A stretch of 64,000 bases of DNA from Octopus sinensis (Eukaryota), in contig NC_043001.1 in assembly GCF_006345805.1 (NCBI RefSeq), positions 88,908,001 to 88,972,000 of the forward strand. Direction: 5' to 3'. Of the stretch, positions 1,986-60,675 are shown piece after piece; within the stretch, counting starts at the first letter, position 1, and the number at the start of each line of letters is the position of its first letter. The notes below the pieces were generated by a model, which did no database searches, was not told the origin of the DNA, and was given only the letters and a program-made list of their open reading frames with translations. Position numbers and translations under genes: made by a program.

Positions 1986-2050
1986 GTGTCTATATATATA
2001 TATGTATATATATCTGTAAATGTAATATGTGACTATTATTTGGTAGCCAT

Positions 2051-2116
2051 GATAAAACTCCGAGTTTCAGATGTCAGGGGAGGGGGGGAATCCACACCGC
2101 CATCTCTTCAGTTATC
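2051..2116 (-). ncRNA. Type-I hammerhead ribozyme-like motif (left arm of palindrome)
   Basis: Minus strand reads gataa-CTGAAGA-gatg...catc-t-GAAA-ctc g gag-TT-ttatc; helix I gataa/ttatc is perfect; GUU triplet. Confidence 0.6.
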
Positions 2117-2152
2117 CGACCATCAGAATAAATGCATTTTTTCCGATGGCCA

Positions 2153-2213
2153 GATAACTGAAGAGATGGCGGCATGGATTTCCACCCCGACATCCGAAAC
2201 TCAGAGTTTTGTC
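2153..2213 (+). ncRNA. Type-I hammerhead ribozyme-like motif (right arm of palindrome)
   Basis: gataa(2153)-CTGAAGA(2158-2164)-gatg...catc-c-GAAA(2196-2199)-ctc a gag-TT(2207-2208)-ttgtc. Confidence 0.6.
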
Positions 2214-2657
2214 ATGGCTACTGAATAATAGTCACATATTACGTTTACAGATCAATTCCTCTATTTACATAATAACGATGTCTCTTTCATTCTTTTATTG
2301 TCTTACCATTTCTCTCAATATATATATATATGTAATGTTATGATGAGTGTGGGGGGGGGGTAGTTGGGAGTATCATATGGCTCTGTGTGAATGTGTGCAT
2401 GTGGTATTGAGTCCCTTTTTGTCTGTTTGTAAGTTGCAATGTGATCTTCATCAGAAGATTATACATTCTATATAATGCTGAAGTTTATCACAGAAAAATA
2501 CACTTCCATATAATTTATTCATATGTCAATTAATGCTGATTGGTGCAGTCATAGGGGAATATTGGAATACTTATTAGAAAAAAAACTGAGTCTGTTTGTT
2601 GGACAAAGTTGAGTTTAGCAACAAGATAATAAAGAATGAATTGGTGTCTCTGCAATA

Positions 2658-3362: not shown

Positions 3363-3529
3363 ATATGATTGTTAGATGTATTATAGGATTCCTTTAAGTG
3401 GCTGGTTGGTGTATACTAGGCTTCTCATTTGTGGTGAGTGAGTGTATAATTGGCTTCATGTGTATATGTATATGTGTGTGTCTGTGTGTATGTAAAAACA
3501 CGTACATATAAATTATATTCATGTATACA

Positions 3530-4440
3530 TAGACATGTAGATTTTTACTGCCTCCAAGAAGTAAGGTGGAGAGGAGGTTCCGGTAGGTTCCTCACAGGCA
3601 AAGAACACAGGTACAAGATTTTCTGGGCAGGGAACACTGACGAGGTCGGGGGCATAGGTATACTTCTTGCGGAGAAATGGGTTAAGGTAATCAAGGTAGT
3701 CAGAGTATGCAATAGAATATTTAAGATTAGATTAGTGCTACGTCATGGGTTAGCAGCCATTATTTCGGCCTATGCCCCTGAGCTGGGGCCACCTGATGGA
3801 CAGAAAGACCAATTTTATGACACCCTCTTGCAGACTACCTTGTTGACGAATGACAGGGACCTTCTCTTTGTGGCTGGTGACTTCAATGGCCATGTTGGAC
3901 ACATGCAGAGGGCTTCCATGGCTCCATGGCATACATGGAGGCTATGGTTTTGGTTCCCACAGTGAGGAGGGAACCAGGCTGCTGGAGTTCTGCAATGCAA
4001 ATGATCTTATGGTTTGCAATACTAACATCAGGAAACCTGCTAGTCACCTACTGATCTGGTTGACACACTAGCCAAATTGATTACAACCTCACCAGAAAAA
4101 AGGAAAGATGGCTGCTTATATATGCCAAAACCTTCCCAGGCGAAGAATGTACCCCACAACATAGACTAGTAGTTAGCGACTTCAGGATCAGGGCTAAATG
4201 GATGCCCAGAAGACGACCAGCATGGAGAAGAAGGGTCTGAAAGCTTAAAGATCCTGTGAATGGACAAAGATTTAGAGATGTATTACTCAAAGCTTTTTAT
4301 GAAATATAGTGGGATATAGCATCACATGATGTGGAAGACAACTGGAGGTTTCTATGGAACAACCTGCTGAGAGCCACTAACCAGATCTGTGGATGATGCA
4401 AAGCCCTCTCTTGACCCAAGGTAATGTGGTGGTGGAACAT
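3530..4440 (+). mobile_element. RTE-clade LINE fragment, APE endonuclease region, frameshifted
   Basis: ORF 3450-3965 has CLQEVRWRG, ISAYAP and GDFNGHVG exonuclease-endonuclease-phosphatase motifs. Confidence 0.9.
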
Positions 4441-6135: not shown

Positions 6136-7039
6136 CACAACACAGTGGAACTGAACCTGAAATCATGTGGTTTCAACCTGAACTTCTTAACCACACAGCC
6201 ATGCTCTTATAAGTTAAGATGTTTTTTTCACCCTCACCCCTATCTAAAAGCCAGGTACCAGTCTCTTGCTTTACTTGTTTTAAACCCTTTAGCATTCAGG
6301 TTACCCTGTCAAATATAATACTTATTTATTCATATTGCTTTGAATTAATCATGCATCATCTCATAACTCTAAAATTTCTGTGATGTGATTGTTTATTTTT
6401 AGAATGACACTGTAGGGTAGGTATGAGAGCCCAGATCTGGCCAGTTTGAACATAAAGCAGATAGAATATTTTGGCCGGATATGACCAGTTAAAATGCTAA
6501 AGGTTTGAAGGTGCTTCACTTGTATTTAAAATATTTTCTATAGGTCTTTTACTTGATCCCTTTTGCTAGTGGTGAGGAAACAGGAAGTTATGTTGACCCT
6601 TTGGTAGTCAGTTTAGTTTGTTAAATATAATGCTTATTTATTCACATTGTTTTGAATTAATCATGCATCATCTTGTAATTTTGAGATGAGATTGTTTACT
6701 TTTAGTATAAAATTGTAAGGTAGGTGTGAGAGGCTATATTTAGCCAGTTTGGACATAAAACAAATGGAATAGTTTGGCTGGATATGGTCAGTTTAAATGC
6801 CAAAGAGTTAAATATGTTAGTGTATTGCTCAGTCAATCAATCTATATGTATCTATCTCATACATGTAAGATACTGATTCTTTCAAATATCCATTAACATG
6901 TTGGACAGAAGAGAGTTTATCCTAGCTCTAGCTATGTCACATACAAGGTTTGGTTTCATCTTAGCATTGCAAGACAAGAAAACATTCATGAGTTATATAG
7001 TGCTCCCTCTGCTTGCATCTGCTTGGATTGTTCATTCCT

Positions 7040-7330
7040 TCTCGAGCCACGCCTCGCTCATAAGGGCCAGTTTCCCAGTTTCCTTGCCATATAGGTTCCC
7101 CACCTGGACGGGATGCCGGTCCGTTGCAGGTGAGCTGCAAGATTCAGGAGGAAAGAGTGAGAGAAAGTTGTGGCGAAAGAGTCAGCAGAATTTCGCCATT
7201 ACCTTCTGTCGGAACCGCATGGAGCTTAGGTGTTTCGCTCATAAACACACACATCGCCCGGTCTGAGATTCAAACCCGCGATCCCTTGACTGCAAGTCTG
7301 CTGCTCTCACCACTAGGCCATGTGCCTCCA
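7040..7330 (-). mobile_element. tRNA-headed SINE (family D)
   Basis: Related to copies at 18358-18665 (+) and 60380-60675 (-). Confidence 0.75.
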
Positions 7331-15195: not shown

Positions 15196-15298
15196 GTGTT
15201 ATGCTTCTTATATGTGCCATTTTATACATTACAAGAACATTTGAAACTTGGCCTGTACGAGAGTCTGAGAAAACTGAAGAGACTGACACATATGACAG
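15196..15298 (+). CDS. TMEM72: TMEM72-like exon
   Basis: ttcttttctttgctag|...|gtaaat; 103 nt, phase 1 to 2; VMLLICAILYITRTFETWPVRESEKTEETDTYD(R). Confidence 0.85.
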
Positions 15299-15399
15299 GT
15301 AAATTGGGGTTTTTATTTTTGTTTTATTTTTCCAATTCTCTTTGGAGATCAGTTAATTTTATAATACCTTTTGAGCATGGTTGTTGCCAGAACCACCTG

Positions 15400-15960: not shown

Positions 15961-16373
15961 TCCTGCTATTGCTAGCTTTGATAGTGTAAGGTGATGGGAG
16001 ACTGGATCTGGCTGTTTTAAACATAAAACAAGTAGAATATTTGGGTGAGATACGGCTGGTTTAAATGCCAAAGGGTTAAAAGACTGCAAGGAAGTTTCCT
16101 GACTTCTTTTGTAGTTAAAACAATATAGAGAGGGTTAGGTTGGTTTTACTACCATTCTTCCTTGGTTCCTGATTATTCTTGATTTGTGTAATCTCTCTTT
16201 TAAAGACAGTATGGATTTTCTTTTGAAAGTGAGAGACAATACAATATAAAAATAACATCCAAAAGCAGGACCAACAAATAGCAATGAATCAGAAAAATTG
16301 TGACTTTTTGTTTCTGAAAATAAGTTTTACCAATTCTCATGCATTATCTCCCTTTCAAGTGTGACCTTATTTA

Positions 16374-16530
<157 letters not shown>

Positions 16531-17035
16531 CCATGGCCATTAAGCTAATGAGAATCCTTTATGCACTTACCTTATTCTGTTAAAACTAACAATCAAATTT
16601 TCTTTAGATTATTCTCTACCATCATCAAAAAAAAAGAAGGTGGTTTCTTATGTTTGTATTGCTACGTTTAATCCTTTAGTGATCAGATAACTCTATCAAA
16701 TGTAATGTTTATTTATTCATATTGTTTTGAATTAATCATGCAATATCTCATAGCTTTGATATTTCAATGACATGCTTGTTTATTTTTAAACTGACATCGA
16801 TATACATTGCCAAAGATAGGATTTTCATGGTGAATATGCCTTTGACCATAGTTCTTGGTTATGGCACATCTGAGTTTAAGAATAACAACACAACCACCAC
16901 CACTACCATCACTATCCCTCAACTGCCACTACCACTAGTACTCAACCTTGACAACACTGCTCTTTCTTTCTCTATCTATATATCTCTTTCGCTCTCACAA
17001 CAGTCACCTCATCCAGATTCTTTCTATTTCTACAG

Positions 17036-17141
17036 GTTTCCAGAAATCCATGATGTATTGGAAGACAATATCATTAACCCTCCTGGGCCCAACACCATCA
17101 TGTTGAACATAGCTGACCAGAATGAAATCATCCAAGTGTAG
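17036..17141 (+). CDS. TMEM72: TMEM72-like terminal coding exon
   Basis: ttctttctatttctacag|G TTT CCA...GTG TAG; phase 2 matches the previous exon; FPEIHDVLEDNIINPPGPNTIMLNIADQNEIIQV*. Confidence 0.78.
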
Positions 17142-17687
17142 CCACTCCACTCCTTACTTTGTCATGGAAGTGGTCCTAGGGTACAGATGGCTTCAGTCAG
17201 TCAATGATTGAAATTTAACCACAAATAATAGTGGTTGGTGTGCCGTGTCCACTTTTGTAATGGGAGAAACAGGGGACAGGCAACACAATATTTCTGTCTT
17301 TCATCGTAAATGTGTGTGTGTGTGTATGCTTGTGTATGTGTGTGCAGATCCATAGATATGTATATGTATAGAAAATATATATATATATATACACACATAC
17401 ACATATAGCTGCGTAAATAAATACATGTGTGTTTATATATATATATATAACATGTACATATGCACACATATATACACATGCATACACACACACACACACA
17501 CACATGTATATATACGCACACAACTATGTATGTGTATACGTGAATATGTATGTATTTATTTATTCATGTGTATATATGTATATACGCACATATATTTATG
17601 TATATATGTATACATGTATATTCATGTATATATGTGTGTGTGTATGTACACAGATACATATAGCTGGTTATATATATATCTTTCTCT

Positions 17688-17726
<39 letters not shown>

Positions 17727-17727
17727 G

Positions 17728-17774
<47 letters not shown>

Positions 17775-18157
17775 CCTCTCGTGATCTCTTTATTTCTCCT
17801 TTTTCTTCTGCCTTTCTCTCTTACTTTCATTTTCTCTTTTTTTCTTTCTAATTAGTTTGTTTTTCCTCTATACTTTATCAAATATCACACATTTATTTAA
17901 TTATTTATTTACCCGTTCATTTTTAGATGATGATGTAGTTGGTTATTACCATCAATATTGACTCCCTTTCCTATTTGATTGAAATTTGGTGTTTTGTGAG
18001 CTTAGTATATGAAAGCCTGAAATAACTATTCTTAACCTTTTGCATTCTTGATTATCATGTTATACAGTGTTCAAAATAATTCTACTTACTGTGTTAACTG
18101 TTATGTGTATGTGTGTATATATATATATAGTACAATTTTATTCACTGGTGTGGTAAG

Positions 18158-18217
18158 AGCCCTGATGAGCATTAAGATGTGTAAGCATCAAAATGTGAAA
18201 TCATCGATGATCTGGCT
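18158..18217 (+). ncRNA. Type-I hammerhead ribozyme, intact core
   Basis: agcc-CTGATGA(18162-68)-gcatt aa gatgt GTAA gcatc aa aatgt-GAAA(18197-200)-TCATCGATGA-TC(18211-12)-t ggct. Confidence 0.75.
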
Positions 18218-18357
18218 ATATGTAGCCTTCCTCCCTTGTCAGTCATTAAGATAGTGCTTTCTGTGGCTATTGACTTGTTTTGACTCTTATTTCTAGCAAT
18301 ACTGGTGCTGATTTGTGCCCTTTGTCACTTTGGTGACATATATATTTCTGCCTTTGC

Positions 18358-18665
18358 AGAGGCACAATGGCCTAGTGGTTAGGGCAGCAGACTCGCGGTC
18401 GGAGGATCGCAGTTTCGATTCCCAGACCGCGTTTATTGTGTGTGTTTATTGAGTGAAAACACCTAAAGCTCCACGAGGCTCTGGCAGGGGGTGGTGGCGA
18501 CCCCTGTTGTACTCTTTCGCCCCAACTTTCTCTCACTCCCTCTTTCTGTTTCCAGAGTAATGCTGCAATGCACTAGCATCCTGTCCAGCTAGGGGAAACA
18601 CATACGCCACAGAAACCGGGAAACCAGGCCCATGAGCCTAGCTAGGCTTGAAAAGGGCGCGTAAA
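18358..18665 (+). mobile_element. tRNA-headed SINE (family D)
   Basis: gaggcacaatggcctagtggttagggcagc...gtttcgattcccagac head. Confidence 0.8.
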
Positions 18666-18732
18666 TAAATAATATATTTCTGCCTTTATGTAATATATAT
18701 ATATGCATACACACACCCAGTGAATAAGATTA

Positions 18733-18766
<34 letters not shown>

Positions 18767-21197
18767 TCAGTTTGTCCAAATAAGTTACATAAGTTACAAA
18801 TAAAAGCATACTGAATATAAGTAATAGACCAGGTATATTTTTCATTATCATCAAACAGTATATTACTGATTACAGCATATGGTTGGTCAGAATGTTATTG
18901 TTGTTATTTGTGCCATATATTATCACTAAACAATATTCTTTGTAATGTAGATATTGCTTGAGAATACATACATACATATTTATAGTAGCAGGGAAGACCC
19001 ATCAACAACAGTGGGTAAAGAAGTATGCTTGAAGTATTTTAGAAACAAAATAGTAAAATGCTGACAAGGAAATATTTCACAGAAAATTCATCAGAACCAA
19101 TATCTTTGATAGTAATTAACCATTTTGTTGTCATGTTTTGGTTTTAATTATTTTTTAAAATAGGAATTTAGTTAAGTGGTTGTCATCATTAAAGCACTGG
19201 ATAAAATGCCTAGTGACATTTCATTAACTTCGTTACATTCTGAGGTCAAATTGCCTAGGTCAGCTTTGCTTTTCATCCTTTTAGGGTTGATAAAATAAGT
19301 ACCAGTTGGACAGTGGGGTCAATGTAATTGACTAATCCCCTGTCCATACAATAGCTGGAGCCGTGCCAAAATTTGAAACCATTATTAAGCTGTGTTTGAA
19401 AGATAAATTTTGATGGAAGGTTTTAATTTAGGTCACTTTTAAACAGAAAGTTTGTGTCCTAAAACAAGAGGTGGGTTTGTATCAAAAGAGTTAAAGTTAT
19501 ATAATGTCAGTTAATGTATTTTAAAATTCTTTGATTCCTTCTTTTAAAAAAAGATACCAAGAAAGTACTTTCTTCCTTGAATCCTTTTAGCTTGACACTT
19601 TTAAATTGTAACAATTCTTTCCTCTTGTACATACAATGTAATTTTTGTCCATGCCTAAATACTAGCTCTAACAACACATTAGCTAATGTCCTCCTAGATA
19701 CACTATGAAAAAAAAAGACAGAATGATTATTATTCAAGTGTCTTCTACTTTAGGCCTGCTCAGTTAGGGGTAGCATGGTGCTAAGCAACAACTAATGTTC
19801 CCTCTAACAAAGTTTTTTTCTCAAACTTCATTCAATGACTGCAATTGACTCTTTCAGTAATTTCAAATGTGAGACTTCTTTGAAATTGCTAGACTTTTCA
19901 GTTGAGTTGATCTAAAATACTTCTGAAAATTTGATTTTCTCCATTAGTACATCTGGTAGTGTCTGCTTCATCAATGAAATTGTTTTGTAGTACTTTCACA
20001 CCTTGTTTTCTTTCATTCCACAACACTCTTTTGAAACTAAGTTTCTTAAGACTTTATCAAATAAATGTACACACTTTGAATTTCATTGTGTTACATTCCT
20101 AATGTATAAGCCCTGTTAATCCCCATTAGTATAGTCAATTATATTTAACTCTTATACTATATTATTAGGGCCTATAATTAAATTTACATTTTGTGACATT
20201 TAAATATATATATGTGAGTTTGTATTTCACCAATTGTAAACAGACAGTATCATTTGCTTGCAATCCACTGCAAAATCACATCTGGGGTTGATGTAATAAA
20301 CTTATCCTCTCCCCTTAAAATTTCTAGCCTTGTGTTAAAATTTGAAATAATTGCTATTATTCAGACAACAAACTGGCAAAATTGTTAGCCCATAAGACAA
20401 AATGCTTAGCAGCATTACTTTCTGGCTTCATATTCTGAGTTCAGATGCTGCCAATGTTGACTTATTCTTCCATCCTTTCTGGGTTGATAAGACCATTGCA
20501 GTAATAAGACCATCATGTAATTAAGTAGCCCCTTTCCACCAAAATTTTAGACTTAGTGTCAATAATAGAAAGGATTATTATAATTAATATTATTATTTGG
20601 ATATTGGATAGTAGCAATAGCACAGTACCTGATTAAATGCATTGTAGCATTTAGTTACATTGTGTATAGAAATCCTGCTAGAATTGTTTGCCTTTTATCT
20701 ATCTGGACTCAATAAGACTCATTAAAATAAGTACCAATAATATTGAGAGAATCAAATCAGTCAATCCTAGTCCTTTCAGAATGTGTGGACCATGTGCCAA
20801 CTTTACATACGGAAATCATCGTTATTTATTATTTATATTTTTTTCTACTTCTCCAACATTTCATAAATATTTTCTTTTATAAAAATTGTTGTATATATAT
20901 TTTTTTTGGTTTTTTTTACCCTAAATTTCAATGCTTTCTTCATCATTTACACCAGTCTGTTTTACTGGAGTCATGATCCCTTTCCTGACTAACTATCCTT
21001 AACTAACATCATCTGCCTTACTCTTTTGAAAAGTTGTACCCAAACAAACTAGGCCTGTTTGTGATCCCTTACATTCTGTACCCTTTGTTATTTATTGGAA
21101 CCCTTACTGCCCACTTTCTGTCTCTTTCTCACCCTCTCTTTCCATATTGAAGATAAATAACAAAAATGAATTATTCTTTGTGTAATGTATTTATATA

Positions 21198-21248
<51 letters not shown>

Positions 21249-21529
21249 ATATATTAACATTATCTTAGATCTGTGTACTGTACATGTGTGTATGTATATG
21301 TATATACATATGTGTTATATATATATATGTATACACACACACACTACACACACATTTATGTTCATATATACATATTATGTATATTTATGTATTGTGTGTG
21401 TGTGTAATGTGTATGTATATGCACACATGCATATGCACATATATTATTTATATATATACATATGCATGTATAATGTGTGTGTGTGTATGTATATATATAT
21501 ATATATATGAATATGAGATTATGGCGCTC

Positions 21530-21860
21530 CCACATTCCTGAGCCAGCAACCCATATTGTCCCTGGATATGTTGCCCTGGCTTGTCTCTGGATCATGTCAG
21601 TAGGGTTGAGAAGATCTGTGAGGTACTGTGCAAGTCTTATTGGACCTAAAATTTTAGGTTGTGCAGTCACCAGCGAGGCAACTTTCTGATGCCCAGTCAA
21701 CAAGGAAGGTGCTGTGGTGAGCATGGAAACCGCTGGTATGAACACAGTGAAGAAAACCGCAGTGCAGTAACCTCATGCATGGGCATTGCTGGCATTTTGC
21801 ACAGGCAATGGTCAGTGATGGTCTTCCTCGGTCACAACTGAATAGCCATCATCATCATGT
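21530..21860 (+). mobile_element. Degenerate LINE 3' end (RTE-like) with (ATC)n tail
   Basis: GC-richer island; decayed DHVSR motif; ends aatagccatcatcatcatg. Confidence 0.45.
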
Positions 21861-21899
21861 ATTATGTATGTATGTGTATGTATATATACACACATTGAC

Positions 21900-22400
<501 letters not shown>

Positions 22401-22545
22401 TATGTAAGTATATAAAATAAAATTGCTCTCAAATGACTATGATCCTTACAGACAAATGTGTATCCAACAATTTAGTAGATCCCAACTTTAAAACTTCCGG
22501 GCCTCTTTCCTCTTCAGTACATTCAGAACATATATATATGTTCTG

Positions 22546-22596
<51 letters not shown>

Positions 22597-22611
22597 CTCT
22601 CTCTCTCTCTC

Positions 22612-22650
<39 letters not shown>

Positions 22651-23030
22651 AGCTGTATTCTCTCTGAAGAGGTTTATAAACACCTAAATCATTTTTCAGC
22701 AAATCTAGATATTTTCTGATACAAGGAGCATTCTGCTACTTAGTAAGTTACAGTGTATGCACATACACGCGCATGTGCATGCGTACACACAAACACACAC
22801 ATTGTTTTTGTTGATTTCTCTTTTATTGTTTTTTTATATATAAAAACAAAAATAGTAAAAAAAAACTATATGAACATAAATATGTATGTGTGGGTGGGTG
22901 CATGCTTACATGTGTAAAGATGTAATAGTGTGTGTGTGTATGTGAGCTGGTGTATATAATTTCTATGCACATATATACATATATTATAAATTTTTTACAT
23001 ACGCACACAAACATGTATGTGTGTATATAT

Positions 23031-23081
<51 letters not shown>

Positions 23082-23106
23082 CACACATGCACACACAAAC
23101 CTGCAA

Positions 23107-23161
<55 letters not shown>

Positions 23162-25069
23162 ATGGGCATTCACACTTTGATATATTTATATACATACACA
23201 CATTCTGACATATGTATGTGTATATATATTTGTGTTTCCCCTCCCCTTTTTTCCCATGTGCCTCTAACAGTTTATATTTACAAAGACACTGTATTTTTTA
23301 ACTATCTTTTACCAATCTGCCTCTACTGCAACTCTGCTCCATTTCTATTTTACCTCTACTGCATTTCTGCTCCATTTCTTGTATGTCTCTTCTGCATCTC
23401 TGCTCTATTTCCAGTATGTCTCTAAATTGTTTGTTTCAGCTTTGCTTCATTTTTACTTTATGTATTTACTGCCATGCTGCTCTGCTGTCCACTGCATCTT
23501 ATTTCCACATCTGCTCCTGTGTAGAAGCTGCAATTCCTTCATCAGTGTATCTCTCTATATATCTAATTTCTTTACTCTTTTGGCTGCTGTAGGGCTGCAG
23601 ATTTTCTGCTCTATTTCTATTCCATTTTCACTTCCATCTTACTCAGATACTCACACACATTCATAGATGCACATATTTACATACATACTTATACACACAC
23701 ACACATACACAAGCATGTGCATGGATCCCCTCATTTATGCATACAAGCATGCATACACACATTGGAGGATAATCTCTATTGTAATTATGAGATATTTATT
23801 TTATCATACAAATCTTATATCCTTAACAGAATCAGAAGCTAATTATCTTCTCAACTAAACACATCCCCACAATATATCCTATTGTCTTCTGAAACCTATT
23901 CAGCAAACCTAGTTGTATTGGTGGTTTCCCTAGCTGTACTGGTGATGTACCTAGTGGTAGTGATGATGTTCCTTGTTTTATCAGTGGTGTATTTAGCTGC
24001 AGCAATAACATACTTTTCTACACTATTGTGTAGTTCATGAACCTCTTGTTGTTCTACGCACTACTGCTAATGCACCTAACCTTGTTGGTTGTGTACTCTA
24101 TGTACATCATTCCACTGTAACTTCATATGTTTCAAAGCTTAATACTTCCTCCTTTAAGTTGAATTCACCAGCAATGGTTTCACTCTCCTCTTCTCCAGTC
24201 TAATTTACACATTTTAATTCTACTAAATGACTTATCTGTGGAAGAGAGCTGCAATCTTAACCACACTAAGTTTAAAAGTTGATCTAATCATATTTTAATT
24301 ATTCCTAACCCACCAGTCATTTCAACACTCAGCTCTGACTTACCCACTATCATTTCAACTACTACATCCTCCCTACTAACTAAGGTGAACTTTTTTTAGT
24401 TTCATACTTTTGATGTTGGTAAATGCAGGTTCTCAGCAGCCCACATCTCCTTTCAATTGTGGATTATGCACTCAAGTTGACACCTCCACTGAAGTGGAGA
24501 TTGGCTATCCACCATTGTTGATCTTACTGGAGAACATCTCTTCTCAGCTGTATGTACCCAGATTTGTTAAAATCACTAGATGACACCTCCACTCAGCTAT
24601 GTATTCAGTGTTGACTTCACTACAACACACCTTCACTCAAGTGGGTTACTTATGCTCAATCTCCTCACTAGATGATTCATCCTCTTCATTGAGTGTTATC
24701 CACATAAATGTCACCAGTCAGCCTTACCTCCACCAATTGCCCCATCTCATTCCATGAATTGTAAACCCTTTTCCGATTTCTTTTTTACCTCCAATTTGAT
24801 AAAGGTTGTCCACTTTCTCCCAGTATATACTATTGTGGCTTCTCTGCAGCCAAGATATTTCCATCGATCAAGAATCTCATCTCTTCTCTCTTTTTATCTG
24901 TCCTATACCACACTCTGACATAAATACACAACATATGTACACATTCACACACACACACACACACATACATATATGCTTGTATATATGTTTGTGTGTGTGT
25001 GCATGCATATATGTATGTATATATGTGTGTGTGTGTACATATATATACACATACAGACATGTATATGCA

Positions 25070-26190: not shown

Positions 26191-29100
26191 CAGGGGCGTG
26201 CACTCTCAGGTATGCAAAGTATGCGCTGCATGCCTTCTTTGTTTCAAAGAAAATCCTTCCAGTTGTTTTCGAAATATTTTGTCTCCCCTTCCCTTCTCAG
26301 TGACTCGTACTTCTGCTTTGAGAAGATCGCATGACACACACTCCCTCTCTGTCTGTATTAGTTTGTCCTTCCTTCCTCTCTCTCTCTTAGTGACTCAATA
26401 AATTCATTGTGGCGTGTCATGCTTTGAGAAGACCACATGACACCCTCTCTCTCTCTTTTTGTTAGTTTGTCCCTCCTTCCTCTCTCTCTTAGTGACTTGT
26501 TTAAAAGATATGGTAGGAGGAATGGTCATTCATAGTAGTTTGTACCCCTTCTCTCAGTGATTCGACAAATTCATTTTGGCATGTCATGCTTTGAGAAGAC
26601 CGCATGACACACCTTTCTGTCTATTTGTTAGTGTAGAATTGTTGCTAACCTGGTTCCACTTTTGACCCGTAAAATTTCTGACCAGAACAAGAGCAGTCCC
26701 ATAATTCTTGAGTTAGCCAGCTGAAATGTTGGAATAGCTTGGCGGTAAGTTTGAATTTTTTTTATCCAAAACATCCGTTTGCACTAATATATTTTTGGAG
26801 TGTTTTGAAAACAAAAATATAATCTATATTATATTTCTTATTTCAGAAATAGCTAATTAATCTTAAATTAATTTAACTAAGGGTATTTTTCCGTTTTGTT
26901 GAAATTGACTTACAATTTACGCCGGCGCTTCCACATGGGTTCTTATATAAGAGCAGCCTTTTCCAAAATGAGTGAAATGTGTGTTATAAACGATATTTTG
27001 AGAAATAGTTTTTCGAAAAGCGACTTCGATAGAAAATAATTATAAATGGTGGGAGACCAACACCGAATTTACCTAATTTGCGAAGCTACAACAAGAAATT
27101 CAGGAGACAATTTCAGAATTTCAGGTTAATTTGTATAAAAAGAAAAAATGGTTAACTGGAAGTGTTGCTCTTAATAAATTATTCTGTTGGCCGTGTTTAC
27201 TTTTTGGCTTAGATAAAAATGTTTGGAATGATAAAGGCTATGATGATTTAAATAATTTACATATGGCTATGCTAAAGCACGAGCATTCTCAAAGGCATAT
27301 AAAATGTTTGATAGATCTTAAAATATTCGGGAATGTTCGCATAGATTTACAATTAGATGCACGTAAAAATCAAAGCATACAACATCATAATGAGAAAGTT
27401 AGACGAAACAGATCCATTCTGCAACGATTGATCGATGTTATTTTTTTAGGCCTCCAGGATTTATCGTTTCGGGGTCATTTTGAATCTGAAGGCTCTAATA
27501 ATCGTGGAAATTATAAAGAACTCGTATATTTGATCAGTAAATATGACAAAAAAATGGAAAGTCATCTAGATACAGCTATATTCACCGGTCTGTCAAACAG
27601 AATTCAAAATGACTTGATCGAAGCAATTCATAAAGTTATGTTGAATGAGATGCAGAAGGAAATTGAGCAAACTAAGTTTGTTTCTATTCTTGTTGATGAG
27701 ACATCTGATGTCTCAGCATCTTCACAACTGTCAACAGTTTTACGTTATGTTACAGAAGACTGTGTGACGAAAGAACGATTTATCGGTTTTAGTGATGTCA
27801 GTGCAGATTGATCTGCAAATGCTTTATCTGAACATGTTTTTAAATGCATTGAGACGTTGGAATGTGGAAACAAATTGATTGCACAGACATATGATGGTGC
27901 CGCTACAATGGCAGGACAACTAAATGGGTTACAGGCAAAAGTAAGAAAGAAATATGAATGTGCGATCTTTATTCATTGTTGTGCCCTTATCCTAAATTTA
28001 GTTCTTTCACAATCATGCTCGGCTATGAAAAAATGCAAGATATTTTTTCTACGATAAACGGACTCGGTACATTTTTTACGAAATCATCGAAAAGGGCTAA
28101 TGCATTAGATAACATTGTTAAAAAAATATTTCTGAAAGCAACAGCAACTAGATGGAATTACTCCTCACGTCTTATTATTACCACAAAGGAAAATTATAAT
28201 TTCATAATCAGCCTTTTTGAACACATCATTGAAAATCCTGAAGCGTGGGATGATACCACCATAAATTCAGCAATTGAATTCTTACACACTTTAAAAGCTC
28301 CCAATTTCTTATTTTTTTAGAAGTATTCAGTGACATTTTTTCTTTTACTGATGTCTTATTTAACATACTCCAGAGTAAAAGTTATGACATAGTGTATTGT
28401 AAAGAGCAAATAGGTAAAACTAGAACTGTACTCGAAAACAAACTTGATAATTTTTCAATCTTTTATGATAGGTTAGGGGGAAAATATGGACTCGATGCAG
28501 GAATCGGAATTCAGAGATCCAAGAATATATCTATTGATCCCCAATGACATTATAGAATGCTTTATAACAAAATTATCAGTACAATAGTTGACCAAATAAA
28601 AGCACGAGTCATCCTTAGAAGAGTTTAAATTCATGGAACTTTTGAATTTCAACTAAGTTGATGAGTATTGCAAACAATTTCCTGTGGACTCTTTAGATTC
28701 TTTAAGAACAAATTATGGTAGATTTTTTTGATGTAATACGATTACAAAGTGAGCTCAATGTAATGTATTCAATGAAAGATTTTAAAAAACCTGGTGTAAG
28801 TCATTTAATGAGTTACATTAACAGCAGTGATCTTGTTGAAGCTATGCCAGAACTCTTCGATCTGTGCAAGTTGATTTTGACAATTCCGTCTACCACTGCT
28901 TCTGTACAGCGATCCTTTTCTGCATTAAGTAGAATTAAAACATACCAAAGAAAGAAGACTGTCTGGATTAGCACTAATGTCAATTGAAAAAGATTTATTA
29001 CAAGAATTGATGAAAAGAGAAGATTTCTATGAAAATGTGATAGATATATTTGCCCAGAAATATCGAAGAATTGAATTAATTTATAAATGAGGTAAATAAC

Positions 29101-30020: not shown

Positions 30021-30261
30021 GAAATATCATCATCATCATCGTTTAACGTCTGCTTTCCATGCTAGCATGGGTTGGACGATTTGACTGAAGACTGGCGAAC
30101 CAGATGGCTGCGCCAGGCTCCAATCTTGATCTGGCAGTTTCTACAGCTGGATGCCCTTCCTAACGCCGAACATATATATATATATATAGTTAATAAAAAA
30201 CATATCAGAAAGAAGCACACTCTAAAAAATAGAGCAGTAATTATTACAACCAACAAAATTT

Positions 30262-30310
30262 TAGAGTTACCCAAGGTTTCGCACCCACATGGACAGCTCA
30301 TCAGATTCTA
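30262..30310 (-). ncRNA. Type-I hammerhead ribozyme-like motif inside an inverted repeat (30243-30381)
   Basis: Minus strand reads tagaat-CTGATGA-gctgtcca tg tgggtgc-GAAA-ccttggg-TA-actcta. Confidence 0.6.
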
Positions 30311-31012
30311 TAGCTGTCCAAAAGGCTTTGGCTTTATGGGTGCGAAACCTTGGATAACTCTATATAAAATTTTGTTGTAATATGTATATATACATACATC
30401 ATCAGTTAATGTCTGTTTCCCATTCTGGCATGACTTTGACAGTTTGACAGGAGCTGTCCCACTGAAGGGTTGTTTAGGCTCCATGTCTATTTTGGCATGG
30501 CTTCTACAGCTGCCTTCCTAATACCAACCACTTTACAGAGTGTAGTGGGTGTTTTTTATGTAGCACCAGCACCTACATATATTGGTTTCAAATTTTGGCA
30601 TACGATCACCAATTTAAGGGGAAGGGTAACTCAATTACATTGACCCCTCAGTGTTCAACTAGTACTTATTTTATCGGATTTCATAGAATTTGAATTCAGA
30701 ACACAAAGACATGAAATGCTCCTAAGCATTTTGCCCAGTGTGCCAGCTAGTTACATATATATATATATAAATAATAAGGGTAGAAATTGATATTAATCAA
30801 TTAAAACCAGTGGCTTAACTTATTTAAAAAATCCGAAGATTAAAAATTGAGTTACAAAATTAAAAGGGAAAAAAACTAGAGTGGACACCTAATATGCTAA
30901 ACATAGACATCAAATCACCATTACCACAAATGCGTTCTCAAGAAAAACCTCAGCAAAACGCCGTTTTGCTGAGATATTAGGTGTCCACTTTAGTGGTCAT
31001 TCCTCTTAATTT

Positions 31013-40039: not shown

Positions 40040-41671
40040 TTACTGTGGGACTGCCGTGACAGTGTATTGGTTATTTTGTGTGTAACTAATGCAAGGTGTG
40101 TACTGAGGATAGGAAAGGGCTTGTCCTGTAGTTGAGGCATTAATTGCCCCTAGACCAAAAGTAGTGTTCCCAAGAGATGAAGTGCCTGGTATGAAAGTGT
40201 GGGGTAAAGCTGTGGTTTGTGGGTAGCCTGGGGGAAAGTTTGGTTGTGGTGTCATATATGGAGCAGATGAAGGTGCATTCGTTGAAGCTGAAACAGCTGG
40301 TGGAGAGAAGTAGAATGGAGCTTGTGGAAAGCTATGGGCTGACATTCTTGTTAAGTATCCAGGAACATTGGGGTTTGGCAAGCGCACACAACAGGCGCTA
40401 CTAGAAGAGCTGGTGGGGTTGGTATGAGACCCTGTGGCACTGGTAACAGTAGATGCATTTGCAGTAGATGCACTTGCTGTTGTACTACCTACTGGTGAAG
40501 TCGAACCATCCAGATTGCAGCCAGGATTGTACATATGCAGTGTATACATAGCTGGATGTGCTTGAGTAATGGGAGACAGCGATGTCATTAGCCCACTAGC
40601 GTTAGTCATTAAATCACTAGTGGTGCTTGTCACAGCAGCAGCAGGCCCTTTACTGGAAGTAGAATTAACTGTCAAACCAGATTTGTCTTTTTTCTCAACA
40701 AAGCCATTGGTTGAACAAACCCGAGGTTGGTCATAATTAAAGCCTGGCAAAAAGCAAGGTGTATCTGGACCAAACGTGTTTCCAGAAGTCATAAACTGTT
40801 CAGCAAGATCCATCTGCTGGCGAAGAATAATAGGCCGACCTTCACACCGAGCTTTTTCTGCATTGGTTTCTGCGAGCATTAGCTGAAATCTCAGGGGAAT
40901 GTCTTTGATCGGTTTAATCAATTTGTGACTGCCATACCAATAGAACTTACGCCTGTTTCGCTTCTCTTGTTCTTTTGGATCAAAAAGGGGTGTTTTTGTC
41001 TCTTCCATGTAATTTTCCCCAATATTGGCCAACTGTGCATCCATCAGTGATTTTGATTCACTCACTGTACTGCTATCATTTGGGTCTGGATTCAAGGATA
41101 AACTCTCACTGGAAGTAACATTATCATCATTGTCTTCACAGTTCAAATTGTCAGTTTTTGCAGCTGGAGTGACACTGCTACACATTGCAATGCCATGTCT
41201 ACTGTTACCATTTACACTGTATGAGGTCATTGATTGTTTCAACCTAACGCTGTCTTCGATCGTATCATTCACAGCTGTCACACATTCATCTGACGTAACT
41301 GCTGTCATCATCGTTTTTGTTGCTGCTGTTGTTAATGGTGTTGGTGCTGATGTTGGCGTTGGTGTTGGTGTTGTAGTTGTATTACTTGCCGTAATCTGCA
41401 TTTTGATTGTTTCCAAAGAGCTTTCATTCAACTTTGGTAGCAATGGCAATGGGTGGGTGTTGTTTCTAAGATAACTGTTATATGGTGACTTTGACAGAGC
41501 TGCAGTAGAGATGGTTGGAGTCTGGTATGGACTGACCCTGGGAAACACATTGCCAGCATTTACATACTTAACCTCTGTTGTTGTTATATTCGCACGGAAT
41601 ATGTTTTTGGGACCAACCCGTACAATTCGGGTGGTTTGCCGGTTGACTTGCTGTCCAGCTGGAACTTTCAT
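40040..41671 (-). CDS. 543-aa largely disordered Ser/Thr/Pro-rich protein of unknown family; single coding exon
   Basis: 1632-bp uninterrupted ORF in repeat-free sequence; acceptor ttcttattttcatttcag 22 nt upstream of ATG; ordered-looking core RRKFYWYGSHKLIKPIKDIPLRFQLMLAETNAEKARCEGRPII. Confidence 0.88.
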   Translation of the reverse strand: MKVPAGQQVNRQTTRIVRVGPKNIFRANITTTEVKYVNAGNVFPRVSPYQTPTISTAALSKSPYNSYLRNNTHPLPLLPKLNESSLETIKMQITASNTTTTPTPTPTSAPTPLTTAATKTMMTAVTSDECVTAVNDTIEDSVRLKQSMTSYSVNGNSRHGIAMCSSVTPAAKTDNLNCEDNDDNVTSSESLSLNPDPNDSSTVSESKSLMDAQLANIGENYMEETKTPLFDPKEQEKRNRRKFYWYGSHKLIKPIKDIPLRFQLMLAETNAEKARCEGRPIILRQQMDLAEQFMTSGNTFGPDTPCFLPGFNYDQPRVCSTNGFVEKKDKSGLTVNSTSSKGPAAAVTSTTSDLMTNASGLMTSLSPITQAHPAMYTLHMYNPGCNLDGSTSPVGSTTASASTANASTVTSATGSHTNPTSSSSSACCVRLPNPNVPGYLTRMSAHSFPQAPFYFSPPAVSASTNAPSSAPYMTPQPNFPPGYPQTTALPHTFIPGTSSLGNTTFGLGAINASTTGQALSYPQYTPCISYTQNNQYTVTAVPQ

Positions 41672-59742: not shown

Positions 59743-59805
<63 letters not shown>

Positions 59806-59854
59806 ACTTATAAACAATGGGTATGAGTAAGTATTTCATTTATATCTTACATAT

Positions 59855-59915
59855 TTATCGCTGATGAGGAGAAAATTCTTATGAATTAGCTCTGAAATTG
59901 GGACCGATATGGTAA
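59855..59915 (+). ncRNA. Type-I hammerhead ribozyme-like motif, intact core
   Basis: ttatcg-CTGATGA(59861-67)-ggag aa aattc ttat gaatt ag ctct-GAAA(59894-97)-ttgg ga ccga-TA-tggtaa. Confidence 0.65.
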
Positions 59916-60142
59916 TAATGGAATTTTATAGAAATTTCTGTTGGCTTGTTTCGAGATGCGTGATTTATAGTGATAAATTATATGGTTATTGACAAATTGT
60001 CTATTTTCGGCATATTTGGCATTAGAAATTTTTTCTTTTGCCCTTCTTTATAAGTTGTTTATAAATTTAACCTTTAAAGGTATTTTTTAATATACTGGCA
60101 ATTGATAAAATTTATTTGCGAAAAAGTTTTATCCTATATTAG

Positions 60143-60379: not shown

Positions 60380-60675
60380 GTTGCTTCTCGAGCCACGCCT
60401 GGCTCATAGGGCCAGTTTCCTGGTTTCCTTGGCATATAGGTTTCCCATCTGGATGGGACGCCAGTCCGTCATAGGTGAGCTGCAAGATGCAGGAGGAAAG
60501 TGTGAGAGAAAGTTGTGGTAAAAGAGTCAGCAGAAGTTCACCATTGCATTCTGCTGGAGCCACATGGAGCTTAGTTGTTTCGCTCATAAACACATACATC
60601 ATCCGGTCTTAGATTTGAACCCGTGATCCTTCGACTATGAGTCCGCTGCTCTAACCACTAGGCCATGTGCCTCCA
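60380..60675 (-). mobile_element. tRNA-headed SINE (family D)
   Basis: Close relative of 7040-7330. Confidence 0.8.

What the first reader, a model, noticed from the sequence alone, without database searches (positions are those of the whole stretch)
18158..18217. Best-preserved hammerhead lies ~1 kb downstream of the TMEM72-like stop codon on the sense strand
Seen: intact CUGAUGA and GAAA; a two-part helix II (gcauu/aaugu, gaugu/gcauc) capped by a GUAA (GNRA) tetraloop; a perfect 10-nt palindrome UCAUCGAUGA as helix III; an AUC triplet at 18210-18212; helix I agcc/ggcu with a 1-nt offset. Helix III can close as a monomer (3 bp plus UCGA loop). Inference: if the 3'UTR reaches this far, the mRNA could be cut after 18212, removing the poly(A) tail. 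3'UTR hammerheads are known regulators in some vertebrate genes.
Basis: partly seen in the sequence, partly recalled or inferred. Interest (0 to 1): 0.7.

Follow-up and report, generated by a model that had tools for sequence, protein, structure and literature searches.

The report
Stray hammerhead motif beside octopus TMEM72
The sequence does contain a complete hammerhead-ribozyme-like motif about 1 kb downstream of the octopus TMEM72 stop codon. It looks like one of several scattered, transposon-style hammerhead relics in this region, predicted to cut poorly, and not a purpose-built switch for the gene.

Summary
Window 18158-18217 (+) carries CUGAUGA, GAAA, a two-part helix II with a GUAA loop, a palindromic helix III and C17 at 18212. 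It lies 1,017 nt after the TMEM72 stop codon (17139-17141) on the sense strand. The window is Octopus sinensis, and O. vulgaris has an identical motif.

It is not a chance match. Hammerhead-compatible three-helix arrangements occur 3 times in the window against about 0.017 expected, and none of 719 permuted-core controls reaches that count. The other motifs are at 2152-2214 (+), 59855-59915 (+) and, weaker, 30310-30255 (-). Each has a (TA)n tract 13-63 nt upstream.

The motif departs from canonical hammerheads:
- G10.1-U11.1 wobble instead of G-C.
- Helix I is only 4 bp and one nucleotide out of register.
- No loop-loop contacts.
- No Rfam hammerhead hit even at E<=10.
- A competing hairpin that buries the core is 8 kcal/mol more stable.

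It sits in a roughly 270-bp unit bounded by terminal inverted repeats (TIRs) and (TA)n tracts, later split by a SINE. An AATAAA signal lies 275 nt after the stop codon, and Argonauta shows no conservation beyond the stop codon.

Best reading: a dispersed minimal type-I hammerhead relic of a mobile element, of the Penelope-like/retrozyme kind. 3'UTR regulation of TMEM72 is not excluded but has no support here.

The parts
17036..17141 (+). Last coding exon of TMEM72 (…FPEIHDVLEDNIINPPGPNTIMLNIADQNEIIQV, stop TAG at 17139-17141)
   Evidence: Sequence. Identical to the C-terminus of the Octopus TMEM72 proteins P0001 and P0003. An upstream exon hits Pfam TMEM72. The gene record in L008 ends at window position 17141.
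17416..17421 (+). First canonical poly(A) signal (AATAAA) after the stop codon, upstream of the motif
   Evidence: Pattern scan. The next signals are at 18664 and 18799.
18116..18129 (.). (TA)n tract directly upstream of the unit that holds the motif
18128..18152 (.). Left terminal inverted repeat (TAGTACAATTTTATTCACTGGTGTG)
   Evidence: Inverted repeat with 18713-18738. The non-microsatellite 20-mer matches at 18 of 20 positions.
18158..18161 (+). Helix I, 5' strand (AGCC)
   Evidence: Pairs with 18214-18217 only if U18213 (position 1.1) is bulged. Only 1 of the first 4 positions (C2.2-G1.2) pairs in register.
18162..18168 (+). Hammerhead core box C3-A9 (CUGAUGA)
18169..18196 (+). Helix II: 5 bp (G10.1-U11.1 wobble at the base), a 2x2 internal loop, 5 bp, and a GUAA tetraloop
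   Evidence: The segment alone folds at -7.5 kcal/mol.
18197..18200 (+). Core box G12 A13 A14 A15.1 (GAAA)
18200..18211 (+). Helix III: 12-nt perfect palindrome AUCAUCGAUGAU (4 bp plus a UCGA loop as a monomer, 12 bp between two molecules)
   Evidence: Monomer hairpin +0.4 kcal/mol, intermolecular duplex -15.5 kcal/mol.
18212..18212 (+). C17, with the predicted scissile bond 3' of this base
   Evidence: Follows from standard hammerhead numbering applied to the sequence. Cleavage was not tested.
18214..18217 (+). Helix I, 3' strand (GGCU)
18163..18206 (+). Competing extended hairpin in which the core UGAUGA pairs with UCAUCG (inactive fold)
   Evidence: Seen in the minimum-free-energy folds. 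In growing-transcript folds it forms as soon as 18206 is made.
18356..18671 (+). tRNA-derived SINE inserted into the unit, flanked by a 16-bp target-site duplication (18340-18355 and 18672-18687)
   Evidence: Copies at 7037-7328 (-) and 60384-60673 (-), plus the exact 16-mer duplication. Sequence. Also present in O. vulgaris.
18713..18738 (.). Right terminal inverted repeat
18737..18763 (.). (TA)n tract directly downstream of the unit
2152..2214 (+). Second hammerhead-like motif: CUGAAGA, G10.1-C11.1, 3-bp helix III, 9-bp helix I. It lies in a 206-bp palindromic element (2030-2235) inside a TMEM72 intron, with a weaker mirror copy on the - strand at 2111-2056.
   Evidence: Weak full-length match to Rfam Hammerhead_1 (12.5 bits).
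59855..59915 (+). Third hammerhead-like motif with the same helix II and helix III architecture as the finding (4 bp, 2x2 loop, 5 bp, tetraloop; helix III of 4 bp plus a tetraloop; G10.1-U11.1; H17 = A)
30255..30310 (-). Weaker hammerhead-like motif (full core, G10.1-C11.1, bulged helix II, 3-bp helix III) in a self-complementary element at 30251-30377

Best explanation
The 60-nt stretch is a real hammerhead-type motif of the minimal type I kind, with helix I open. Its features are a short helix I, a long helix II, and a short palindromic helix III that would need two copies to form a stable 'double hammerhead'.

It is one of several dispersed hammerhead-like motifs of unrelated sequence in this part of the Octopus sinensis genome. 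Each lies in a short unit next to a (TA)n microsatellite. It is most likely a relic of a hammerhead-carrying mobile element, of the kind described for Penelope-like elements and their non-autonomous derivatives (retrozymes).

The unit landed in, or was built next to, a (TA)n tract in the 3' flank of TMEM72 and was later split by a SINE. If it is transcribed, the RNA is expected to fold mainly into an extended hairpin that buries the catalytic core. Self-cleavage after C18212 would then be slow or absent for a single copy. Its position near TMEM72 is incidental.

Shown: the motif anatomy, the enrichment over chance, the TIR and (TA)n context, the thermodynamic competition, and identity in O. 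vulgaris.
Inferred: the mobile-element origin and the low activity.
For: Anatomy: read directly.

Enrichment over chance:
- CUGAUGA-N8-38-GAAA occurs 6 times in the window against 1.86 expected.
- The strict three-helix descriptor gives 2 hits against 0.007 in Markov simulations, and 0 hits in 719 permuted-core decoys.
- The energy-based test gives 3 balanced hits at <= -8 kcal/mol against a decoy mean of 0.017, with 0 of 719 decoys reaching it.

Mobile-element context:
- 20-nt terminal inverted repeats (18 of 20 matching) and (TA)n tracts on both sides.
- The SINE with its 16-bp target-site duplication is nested inside the unit.
- All four motif-bearing units have a (TA)n tract 13-63 nt upstream, whereas only 12% of the window lies within 60 nt of such a tract.
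- Two of the other motifs lie in palindromic elements, one of them with hammerhead-like motifs on opposite strands.

Match to the literature:
- PMC4209133 describes minimal hammerheads of metazoan Penelope-like elements (PLEs) with helix I of 4-5 bp, a larger helix II, palindromic 15.2-16.2 and loop 3, extreme sequence heterogeneity, mostly single dispersed copies, pairs on opposite strands, and low activity in vitro.
- PMC8557442 reports PLE insertion bias for microsatellites, including (TA)n.

Predicted low activity:
- Hammerhead fold -11.9 versus minimum free energy -19.9 kcal/mol, competent fraction about 5e-6.
- Helix III hairpin +0.4 versus intermolecular duplex -15.5 kcal/mol, and the core is sequestered co-transcriptionally.
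- No Rfam hammerhead hit.
Against: - No second copy of the roughly 270-bp unit was found in about 220 kb of cephalopod sequence, so no repeat family and no covariation could be shown.
- No PLE reverse transcriptase or GIY-YIG domain is present in the window.
- Terminal inverted repeats with TA flanks also fit a DNA-transposon MITE, which is not a known hammerhead carrier.
- The motif-bearing units share no primary sequence.
- The octopus genome as a whole could not be searched with these tools.
- Nearest-neighbour energies ignore hammerhead tertiary contacts, so the inactivity is a prediction only.
Confidence: 0.6

Rival explanations
1. A functional cis-acting ribozyme in an extended TMEM72 3'UTR. 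Transcripts that read past the proximal poly(A) site are cut after C18212, lose their poly(A) tail and are degraded.
For: - Sense strand, complete catalytic core, 1,017 nt after the stop codon.
- No canonical AATAAA between 17421 and the motif, so read-through transcripts would contain it.
- Motif identical in O. vulgaris.
- A precedent exists for a 3'UTR hammerhead, in Clec2 (PMC6155905).
Against: - AATAAA at 17416 would end the UTR about 740 nt before the motif.
- No UTR annotation or transcript data could be obtained.
- Predicted to be a poor monomeric ribozyme.
- TE-like context, with similar motifs elsewhere in the window that are unrelated to the UTR.
- No similarity beyond the stop codon in Argonauta.
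- Identity with O. vulgaris is expected from the 98% background identity.
Confidence: 0.05
2. A chance match. An ordinary imperfect hairpin (18163-18206) next to a short palindrome happens to contain the two core boxes. There is no evolutionary link to hammerhead ribozymes.
For: - The most stable fold is a plain hairpin, not a hammerhead.
- Rfam models do not recognise it.
- G-U at 10.1-11.1 and an out-of-register helix I.
- At roughly 0.003-0.007 chance hits per 64 kb, a genome of a few Gb (my own figure, about 2.7 Gb) would hold tens to hundreds of chance hits.
- The descriptor was partly shaped after seeing this motif.
Against: - Independent additional motifs in the same window raise the count far above every control. 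0 of 719 permuted-core decoys reach it.
- Per instance, 3 of the 16 true core pairs evaluated across window+L008up+L009 (2 in the window, 1 in Argonauta L009) reach <= -12 kcal/mol, against about 0.6% of decoy pairs.
- Helix II contains a well-formed inner stem and tetraloop that the descriptor did not ask for, and the motif at 59861 repeats this architecture.
- All motif-bearing units sit next to (TA)n tracts.
Confidence: 0.12
3. The relevant feature is the TIR-bounded unit itself, a MITE-like DNA element with internal hairpins. The hammerhead-like arrangement is a by-product of its palindromic sequence, possibly giving a hairpin RNA if transcribed.
For: - Inverted repeats of 20 nt and TA flanks.
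- A 70-nt hairpin at -19.9 kcal/mol, z-score -2.6.
- Two other motifs lie in strongly palindromic short elements.
Against: - Palindromes are equally available to the permuted-core decoys, which give almost no hits.
- No other copy of the unit exists in 220 kb.
- The hairpin has large internal loops, and no miRNA family matches it.
Confidence: 0.15

Closest known systems
Minimal type I hammerheads of Penelope-like elements (Cervera & de la Peña 2014, PMC4209133)
   Same: Type I topology, helix I of only 4-5 bp with no defined loop 1, an enlarged helix II, and a palindromic helix III suited to acting as a dimer. Sequences are highly heterogeneous, mostly single dispersed copies, sometimes in pairs on opposite strands. 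Activity is low or absent for a single copy. PLEs prefer microsatellite targets, including (TA)n (PMC8557442).
   Different: The pair at 10.1-11.1 is G-U here, not the conserved G-C. There is no extra nucleotide between A9 and 10.1. Helix III is fuller (4 bp plus a tetraloop) than in most PLE minimal hammerheads. No PLE ORF or pseudo-LTR is visible in the window. The unit has terminal inverted repeats.
Type I hammerheads of metazoan non-LTR retrozymes (PMC7229834; bioRxiv 10.64898/2026.07.22.740005)
   Same: Type I hammerhead in a low-GC unit a few hundred bp long (about 270 bp here, against 170-400 nt). Some family members cleave well only as dimers because helix III is weak and palindromic.
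   Different: Retrozymes occur as tandem repeats, usually with conserved loop 1-loop 2 contacts. This motif is a single copy with no tandem partner, and no such contacts are visible.
Discontinuous hammerhead in the 3'UTR of mammalian Clec2 genes (Martick et al. 2008, as summarised in PMC6155905)
   Same: A hammerhead downstream of a stop codon on the sense strand, proposed to affect 3' end formation.
   Different: The Clec2 ribozyme is type III with a very long helix I insertion, and it is conserved among several mammals. The octopus motif is a compact type I motif in a TE-like unit, with no shown UTR membership and no conservation beyond sister species.
Double hammerheads of newt satellite 2 and ASBVd (Forster et al. 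1988, as cited in PMC4209133 and PMC7229834)
   Same: Helix III is too weak as a monomer (+0.4 kcal/mol) but palindromic, so two copies can form a long shared helix III (12 bp, -15.5 kcal/mol).
   Different: Those RNAs are made as tandem multimers, which brings two ribozymes together. Here only one copy exists at the locus.

Membership tests
Hammerhead ribozyme (structural class) | Conserved core nucleotides C3 U4 G5 A6 N7 G8 A9, G12 A13 A14, the A15.1-U16.1 pair, and H17 (not G) | tested here: met
   CUGAUGA at 18162-68, GAAA at 18197-200, A18200-U18211, C18212.
Hammerhead ribozyme (structural class) | Three helices I, II and III radiating from the core | tested here: inconclusive
   Helix II (10 bp) and helix III (4 bp) can form. 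Helix I has only 4 bp and needs U1.1 bulged. The hammerhead fold is 8 kcal/mol less stable than the minimum-free-energy hairpin.
Hammerhead ribozyme (structural class) | G10.1-C11.1 pair at the base of helix II, highly conserved in natural hammerheads (PMC4209133) | tested here: not met
   G18169 pairs with U18196 as a wobble. The motif at 59861 has the same wobble.
Hammerhead ribozyme (structural class) | Tertiary contacts between loop 1 and loop 2 that allow activity at physiological Mg2+ | tested here: not met
   Helix I is a 4-bp open stem with no loop 1, and helix II is 10 bp long, so its GUAA loop extends well past helix I. This is inferred from secondary structure only.
Hammerhead ribozyme (structural class) | Site-specific self-cleavage 3' of position 17 | not testable with these tools
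   Requires in vitro transcription and cleavage assays.
Rfam hammerhead families (RF00163, RF00008, RF02275-RF02277) | Covariance-model score at or above the gathering threshold | tested here: not met
   No hit at gathering over the whole window. No hammerhead hit at E<=10 on 2.5 kb or on 141 nt. For comparison, the motif at 2152-2214 scores 12.5 bits against RF00163, whose gathering score is 34.
PLE minimal hammerhead (PMC4209133) | Short helix I (4-5 bp), enlarged helix II, palindromic 15.2-16.2 and loop 3 | tested here: met
   Helix I 4 bp, helix II 5+5 bp, and a perfect 12-nt palindrome at 18200-18211.
PLE minimal hammerhead (PMC4209133) | Unpaired nucleotide between A9 and 10.1 | tested here: not met
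   G18169 directly follows A18168 and pairs with U18196.
PLE minimal hammerhead (PMC4209133) | Location in the pseudo-LTR of a Penelope-like element, or in a truncated copy | tested here: inconclusive
   No RT or GIY-YIG domain among 80 long ORF segments of the window. Truncated solo copies are the commonest state according to PMC4209133. Being next to a (TA)n tract fits the PLE target bias (PMC8557442).
PLE minimal hammerhead (PMC4209133) | Membership of a genome-wide consensus family with compensatory changes | not testable with these tools
   No searchable octopus genome was available. There is no second copy in 220 kb.
Non-LTR retrozyme (PMC7229834) | Tandem repeats of 170-400 bp, each with a type I hammerhead | tested here: not met
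   Single copy, no tandem or nearby repeat of the unit.
3'UTR regulatory hammerhead (Clec2 type) | The motif lies within the mature 3'UTR | not testable with these tools
   The gene records end at the stop codon. AATAAA lies at 17416, upstream of the motif.
3'UTR regulatory hammerhead (Clec2 type) | Conservation of the motif at orthologous loci of diverged species | tested here: inconclusive
   Identical in O. vulgaris, but the flank is 98% identical anyway. Absent or unalignable in Argonauta hians. O. bimaculoides DNA could not be retrieved.

The most novel reading that the evidence does not exclude
Octopus genomes may carry a large, undescribed population of short, (TA)n-associated elements with terminal inverted repeats or palindromic structure, each carrying a non-canonical type I hammerhead (G-U at 10.1-11.1, two-part helix II). 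A rough density of one per 20-60 kb would mean tens of thousands of copies. Some, such as this one in the TMEM72 3' flank or the one in its intron, could cleave host transcripts. That would make this the first invertebrate case of hammerhead-mediated mRNA 3'-end control.
Probability: 0.07. Interest if true: 0.65.

Novelty: new member of a known kind. Interest (0 to 1): 0.3.

Why it matters
Dispersed minimal hammerheads tied to retroelements are already known to be abundant in many animal genomes. Another one in an octopus is therefore not surprising in itself.

Two points have modest value. First, a full-text search found no paper describing hammerhead motifs in cephalopods. The local excess seen here, of sequence-unrelated motifs next to (TA)n tracts, suggests that a genome-wide survey would find a sizeable family. 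Second, if any of these motifs is transcribed within a host gene and cleaves, it would affect how octopus 3' ends and introns are interpreted.

For TMEM72 specifically, nothing found here points to regulation by this motif.

Tried and rejected
- **Rfam** at gathering threshold over the whole window, and at E<=10 on 2.5 kb and on 141 nt. No hammerhead hit for the finding. The hits nearby are low-complexity miRNA and snoRNA noise.
- **ARAGORN.** No tRNA genes. The SINE head is only tRNA-like.
- **Search for copies of the motif or its unit.** blastn and nhmmer against the window and three fetched loci found none beyond the orthologues.
- **ORF trick.** I searched the 68-aa ORF that overlaps the motif against the protein collection, hoping to fish out related octopus contigs. 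No candidates.
- **Metagenome scan** for CTGATGAGCATT-N10-20-AATGTGAAA. The six hits are unrelated GC-rich metagenome contigs (three of them one identical sequence), at about the number expected by chance for a 21-base pattern. Rejected.
- **O. bimaculoides orthologue.** The gene range exceeds 100 kb, so no DNA is returned, and isoform X2 is not on record. O. vulgaris isoform P0002 is not on record either.
- **Second TMEM72 protein search for more orthologues.** Only the same two clusters came back.
- **Homology between the units at 18132 and 59804.** Alignment score no better than shuffled sequence.
- **PLE proteins in the window.** The Pfam scan found only hAT and endonuclease/exonuclease/phosphatase (EEP) fragments and zinc-finger hits.
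- **A second, stricter descriptor** (helix II of at least 5 bp with one symmetric mismatch allowed) kept only the finding itself. This showed that hit counts depend on the descriptor, so I replaced it with the energy-based decoy test.
- **miRNA-precursor reading of the 70-nt hairpin.** Rejected for large internal loops, modest energy and no family match.
- **Supplement of PMC7229834.** No mention of octopus or cephalopods.
Full report
**What is there**

The sequence at 18158-18217 (+) reads AGCC-CUGAUGA-GCAUU-AA-GAUGU-GUAA-GCAUC-AA-AAUGU-GAAA-UCAUCGAUGA-UC-U-GGCU. In standard hammerhead numbering:
- C3-A9 is 18162-18168.
- Helix II is 18169-18196: 5 bp, a 2x2 internal loop, 5 bp, and a GUAA loop.
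- G12-A15.1 is 18197-18200.
- Helix III is 18200-18211: A-U, U-A, C-G, A-U closing a UCGA loop. The whole 12-mer AUCAUCGAUGAU is a perfect palindrome.
- C17 is 18212.
- Helix I forms only as AGCC (18158-61) with GGCU (18214-17), with U1.1 (18213) left unpaired.

The topology is type I, with helix I open.

**Genomic setting**

The window is Octopus sinensis chromosome CM016863.1. Locus L008 is 100% identical to it. TMEM72 lies on the + strand:
- One exon hits Pfam TMEM72.
- The last coding exon (17036-17141) ends ...NEIIQV-stop, exactly as in the Octopus TMEM72 proteins.

Between the stop codon and the motif lie an AATAAA at 17416 and about 500 nt of TG, TA and CT microsatellites. The next AATAAA signals are at 18664 and 18799. 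The gene records available end at the stop codon, so they say nothing about the UTR.

**Is it more than chance?**

Rfam does not call a hammerhead here, at gathering threshold or at E<=10 on a 141-nt slice. Three independent controls nevertheless argue against chance.

1. The two core boxes at hammerhead spacing occur 6 times in the window, against 1.86 in dinucleotide-preserving shuffles.
2. A strict descriptor was applied: perfect core, helix II of at least 4 bp, helix III of at least 4 bp, helix I of at least 4 bp with at most a 1-nt offset.
   - It finds two sites, 18162 and 59861.
   - First-order Markov simulations expect 0.007.
   - 719 decoys, in which the letters of the core boxes are permuted, give no hit on the real sequence.
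   - Allowing one core mismatch adds nothing.
3. Descriptor choice matters: a second descriptor kept only the finding itself. I therefore scored every core-box pair by the summed folding energy of its three helices and did the same for all 719 decoys.
   - In the window the true core gives three balanced hits at <= -8 kcal/mol, against a decoy mean of 0.017. No decoy reaches that count.
   - Per instance, 3 of the 16 true core pairs evaluated across the window, the upstream L008 sequence and Argonauta (two in the window, one in Argonauta) reach <= -12 kcal/mol, against about 0.6% of decoy pairs. The excess is therefore not explained by the core words simply being common.

**The other motifs**

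| Position | Features | Setting |
|---|---|---|
| 2152-2214 (+) | CUGAAGA, G10.1-C11.1, 9-bp helix I | 206-bp palindromic element in a TMEM72 intron, with a weaker mirror motif on the opposite strand |
| 59855-59915 (+) | G10.1-U11.1, H17 = A | About 340-bp unit between (TA)n tracts |
| 30310-30255 (-) | Weaker; full core, bulged helix II | Self-complementary element at 30251-30377 |

- The motif at 2152-2214 is the only one that Rfam Hammerhead_1 aligns end to end. It scores 12.5 bits, far below the gathering score of 34.
- The motif at 59855-59915 repeats the architecture of the finding without any sequence similarity. Both have a basal stem of 4-5 bp, a 2x2 internal loop, a 5-bp stem and a tetraloop in helix II. 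Both have 4 bp plus a tetraloop in helix III, and G-U at 10.1-11.1.
- All four motif-bearing units have a (TA)n tract 13-63 nt upstream, while only 12% of the window lies within 60 nt of such a tract.

**Immediate context of the finding**

The motif sits 6 nt inside the left arm of a pair of inverted repeats, 18128-18152 and 18713-18738. The 20-mer AGTACAATTTTATTCACTGG matches its partner at 18 of 20 positions. Both arms abut (TA)n tracts. A tRNA-derived SINE (18356-18671) with an exact 16-bp target-site duplication is nested inside. Without the SINE the unit is about 270 bp with 36% GC.

No other copy of this unit exists in the window, in 57 kb of further O. sinensis sequence, in the O. vulgaris orthologue or in 46 kb of Argonauta. 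No Penelope-like reverse transcriptase or GIY-YIG domain is present in the window.

**Would it cut?**

This part is inference from structure.
- The core is complete, but the 10.1-11.1 pair is G-U, whereas G-C is reported as highly conserved (PMC4209133).
- Helix I is four pairs and one nucleotide out of register, next to the scissile bond.
- There is no loop 1 to contact the helix II loop. Such contacts are what make natural hammerheads fast at cellular Mg2+ (PMC6155905).
- Helix III as a monomer hairpin is worth +0.4 kcal/mol.
- The core UGAUGA (18163-68) is complementary to UCAUCG (18201-06), the 5' half of helix III. The minimum-free-energy structure is therefore an extended hairpin at -19.9 kcal/mol, against -11.9 for the hammerhead fold, and the hammerhead-competent share of the ensemble is about 5e-6.
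- In growing-transcript folds the inactive hairpin appears as soon as 18206 is made, before the 3' strand of helix III exists.

The 12-nt palindrome would give a 12-bp intermolecular helix III (-15.5 kcal/mol), the 'double hammerhead' solution used by newt satellite, ASBVd and PLE ribozymes. That needs two copies, and the locus has one. Nearest-neighbour energies ignore tertiary structure, so only an assay can settle activity.

**Comparison with known systems**

The closest match is the minimal type I hammerhead of metazoan Penelope-like elements. These have helix I of 4-5 bp with no defined loop 1, a longer helix II and a palindromic helix III. Their sequences are extremely heterogeneous within a genome, and most occur as dispersed single copies thought to be truncated elements. 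Some occur as pairs on opposite strands 100-700 bp apart, and their activity in vitro is low (PMC4209133). PLEs also show an insertion bias for microsatellites, including (TA)n (PMC8557442).

Differences from that family:
- G-U instead of G-C at 10.1-11.1.
- No extra nucleotide between A9 and 10.1.
- A fuller helix III.
- Terminal inverted repeats on the unit.
- No PLE ORF nearby.

Non-LTR retrozymes share the unit size and low GC content but are tandem repeats (PMC7229834), which this is not. It differs in architecture and in the evidence behind it.

**Conservation**

O. vulgaris (L007) has the motif unchanged, with one substitution just outside it at 18221. The 3-kb flank is 98.1% identical overall, so about 0.4 changes are expected in 60 nt. 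This comparison cannot show constraint. In Argonauta hians, similarity ends at the stop codon and no counterpart of the unit is found. O. bimaculoides DNA could not be fetched.

**Verdict**

- The best-supported explanation, at about 0.6, is a relic or low-activity minimal hammerhead of mobile-element origin that lies in the TMEM72 3' flank by accident of insertion.
- Regulation of TMEM72 through 3'UTR cleavage is not excluded but has no positive support (about 0.05).
- Pure chance (about 0.12) and a MITE hairpin by-product (about 0.15) remain possible.
- Novelty is low: a new member of a known kind, in a lineage for which a full-text search found no report of such motifs.

Noticed in passing
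window 2016-2249 (motif at 2152-2214 +, mirror at 2111-2056 -): A palindromic element of about 206-230 bp (82% self-complementary) lies inside a TMEM72 intron. It carries a hammerhead-like motif on each strand, facing outward. The + strand copy has CUGAAGA, G10.1-C11.1 and a 9-bp helix I, and it is the only motif in the window that Rfam Hammerhead_1 aligns full-length (12.5 bits, E=2.3 on a 106-nt slice). It is also present in O. vulgaris.
   Followed up: partly
window 59804-60142 (motif at 59855-59915 +): A unit of about 340 bp between two (TA)n tracts holds a hammerhead-like motif. Its helix II and helix III architecture and its G10.1-U11.1 wobble copy those of the finding, yet there is no primary-sequence similarity.
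   Followed up: partly
window 30251-30377 (motif at 30310-30255 -): A self-complementary element (69% over 147 nt) carries a weaker hammerhead-like motif with a full core, G10.1-C11.1, a bulged U in helix II, a 3-bp helix III and a GUA cleavage triplet.
   Followed up: partly
window 18356-18671, 7037-7328 (-), 60384-60673 (-): A tRNA-derived SINE family with about 71-74% identity between copies. The copy at 18356 has an exact 16-bp target-site duplication (ATATATTTCTGCCTTT) and an AATAAA in its tail at 18664. ARAGORN calls no tRNA in it.
   Followed up: partly
window 27077-29000 (+): Remnant of a hAT-type DNA transposon: DUF4371 (E=3e-15) and a hAT dimerisation domain among the long ORF segments.
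   Followed up: no
window 3450-3962 (+): ORF fragment with an endonuclease/exonuclease/phosphatase domain, presumably the endonuclease of a non-LTR retrotransposon, inside a TMEM72 intron.
   Followed up: no
window 15196-15300 and 16939-17103 (+); protein P0002: The O. vulgaris annotation holds a second, 161-aa TMEM72 product whose C-terminus is read from alternative frames of the last two exons (…EHLKLGLYESLRKLKRLTHMTGFQKSMMYWKTISLTLLGPTPSC). It looks like an alternative splice form or an annotation artefact.
   Followed up: no
window 40043-41671 (-): A 543-aa uninterrupted ORF, rich in Ser, Thr, Pro and Ala, with no annotation obtained here. The zinc-finger Pfam hits (KIN17, SUZ12, C2H2) in the batch scan were not assigned to a particular ORF segment.
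   Followed up: no
L009 1339-1256 (-) (Argonauta hians): A core-box pair whose summed helix energy is -12.1 kcal/mol, almost all of it from helix I (-10.2). The fit is unbalanced and was not examined further.
   Followed up: no
window 16370-16530, 17290-17790, 21180-23240 and many others: Very dense (CT)n, (TG)n and (TA)n microsatellite arrays, with 60 (TA)n tracts of at least 10 nt in 64 kb. They generate spurious sub-threshold miRNA hits (mir-297, mir-466, mir-3149) in Rfam.
   Followed up: yes
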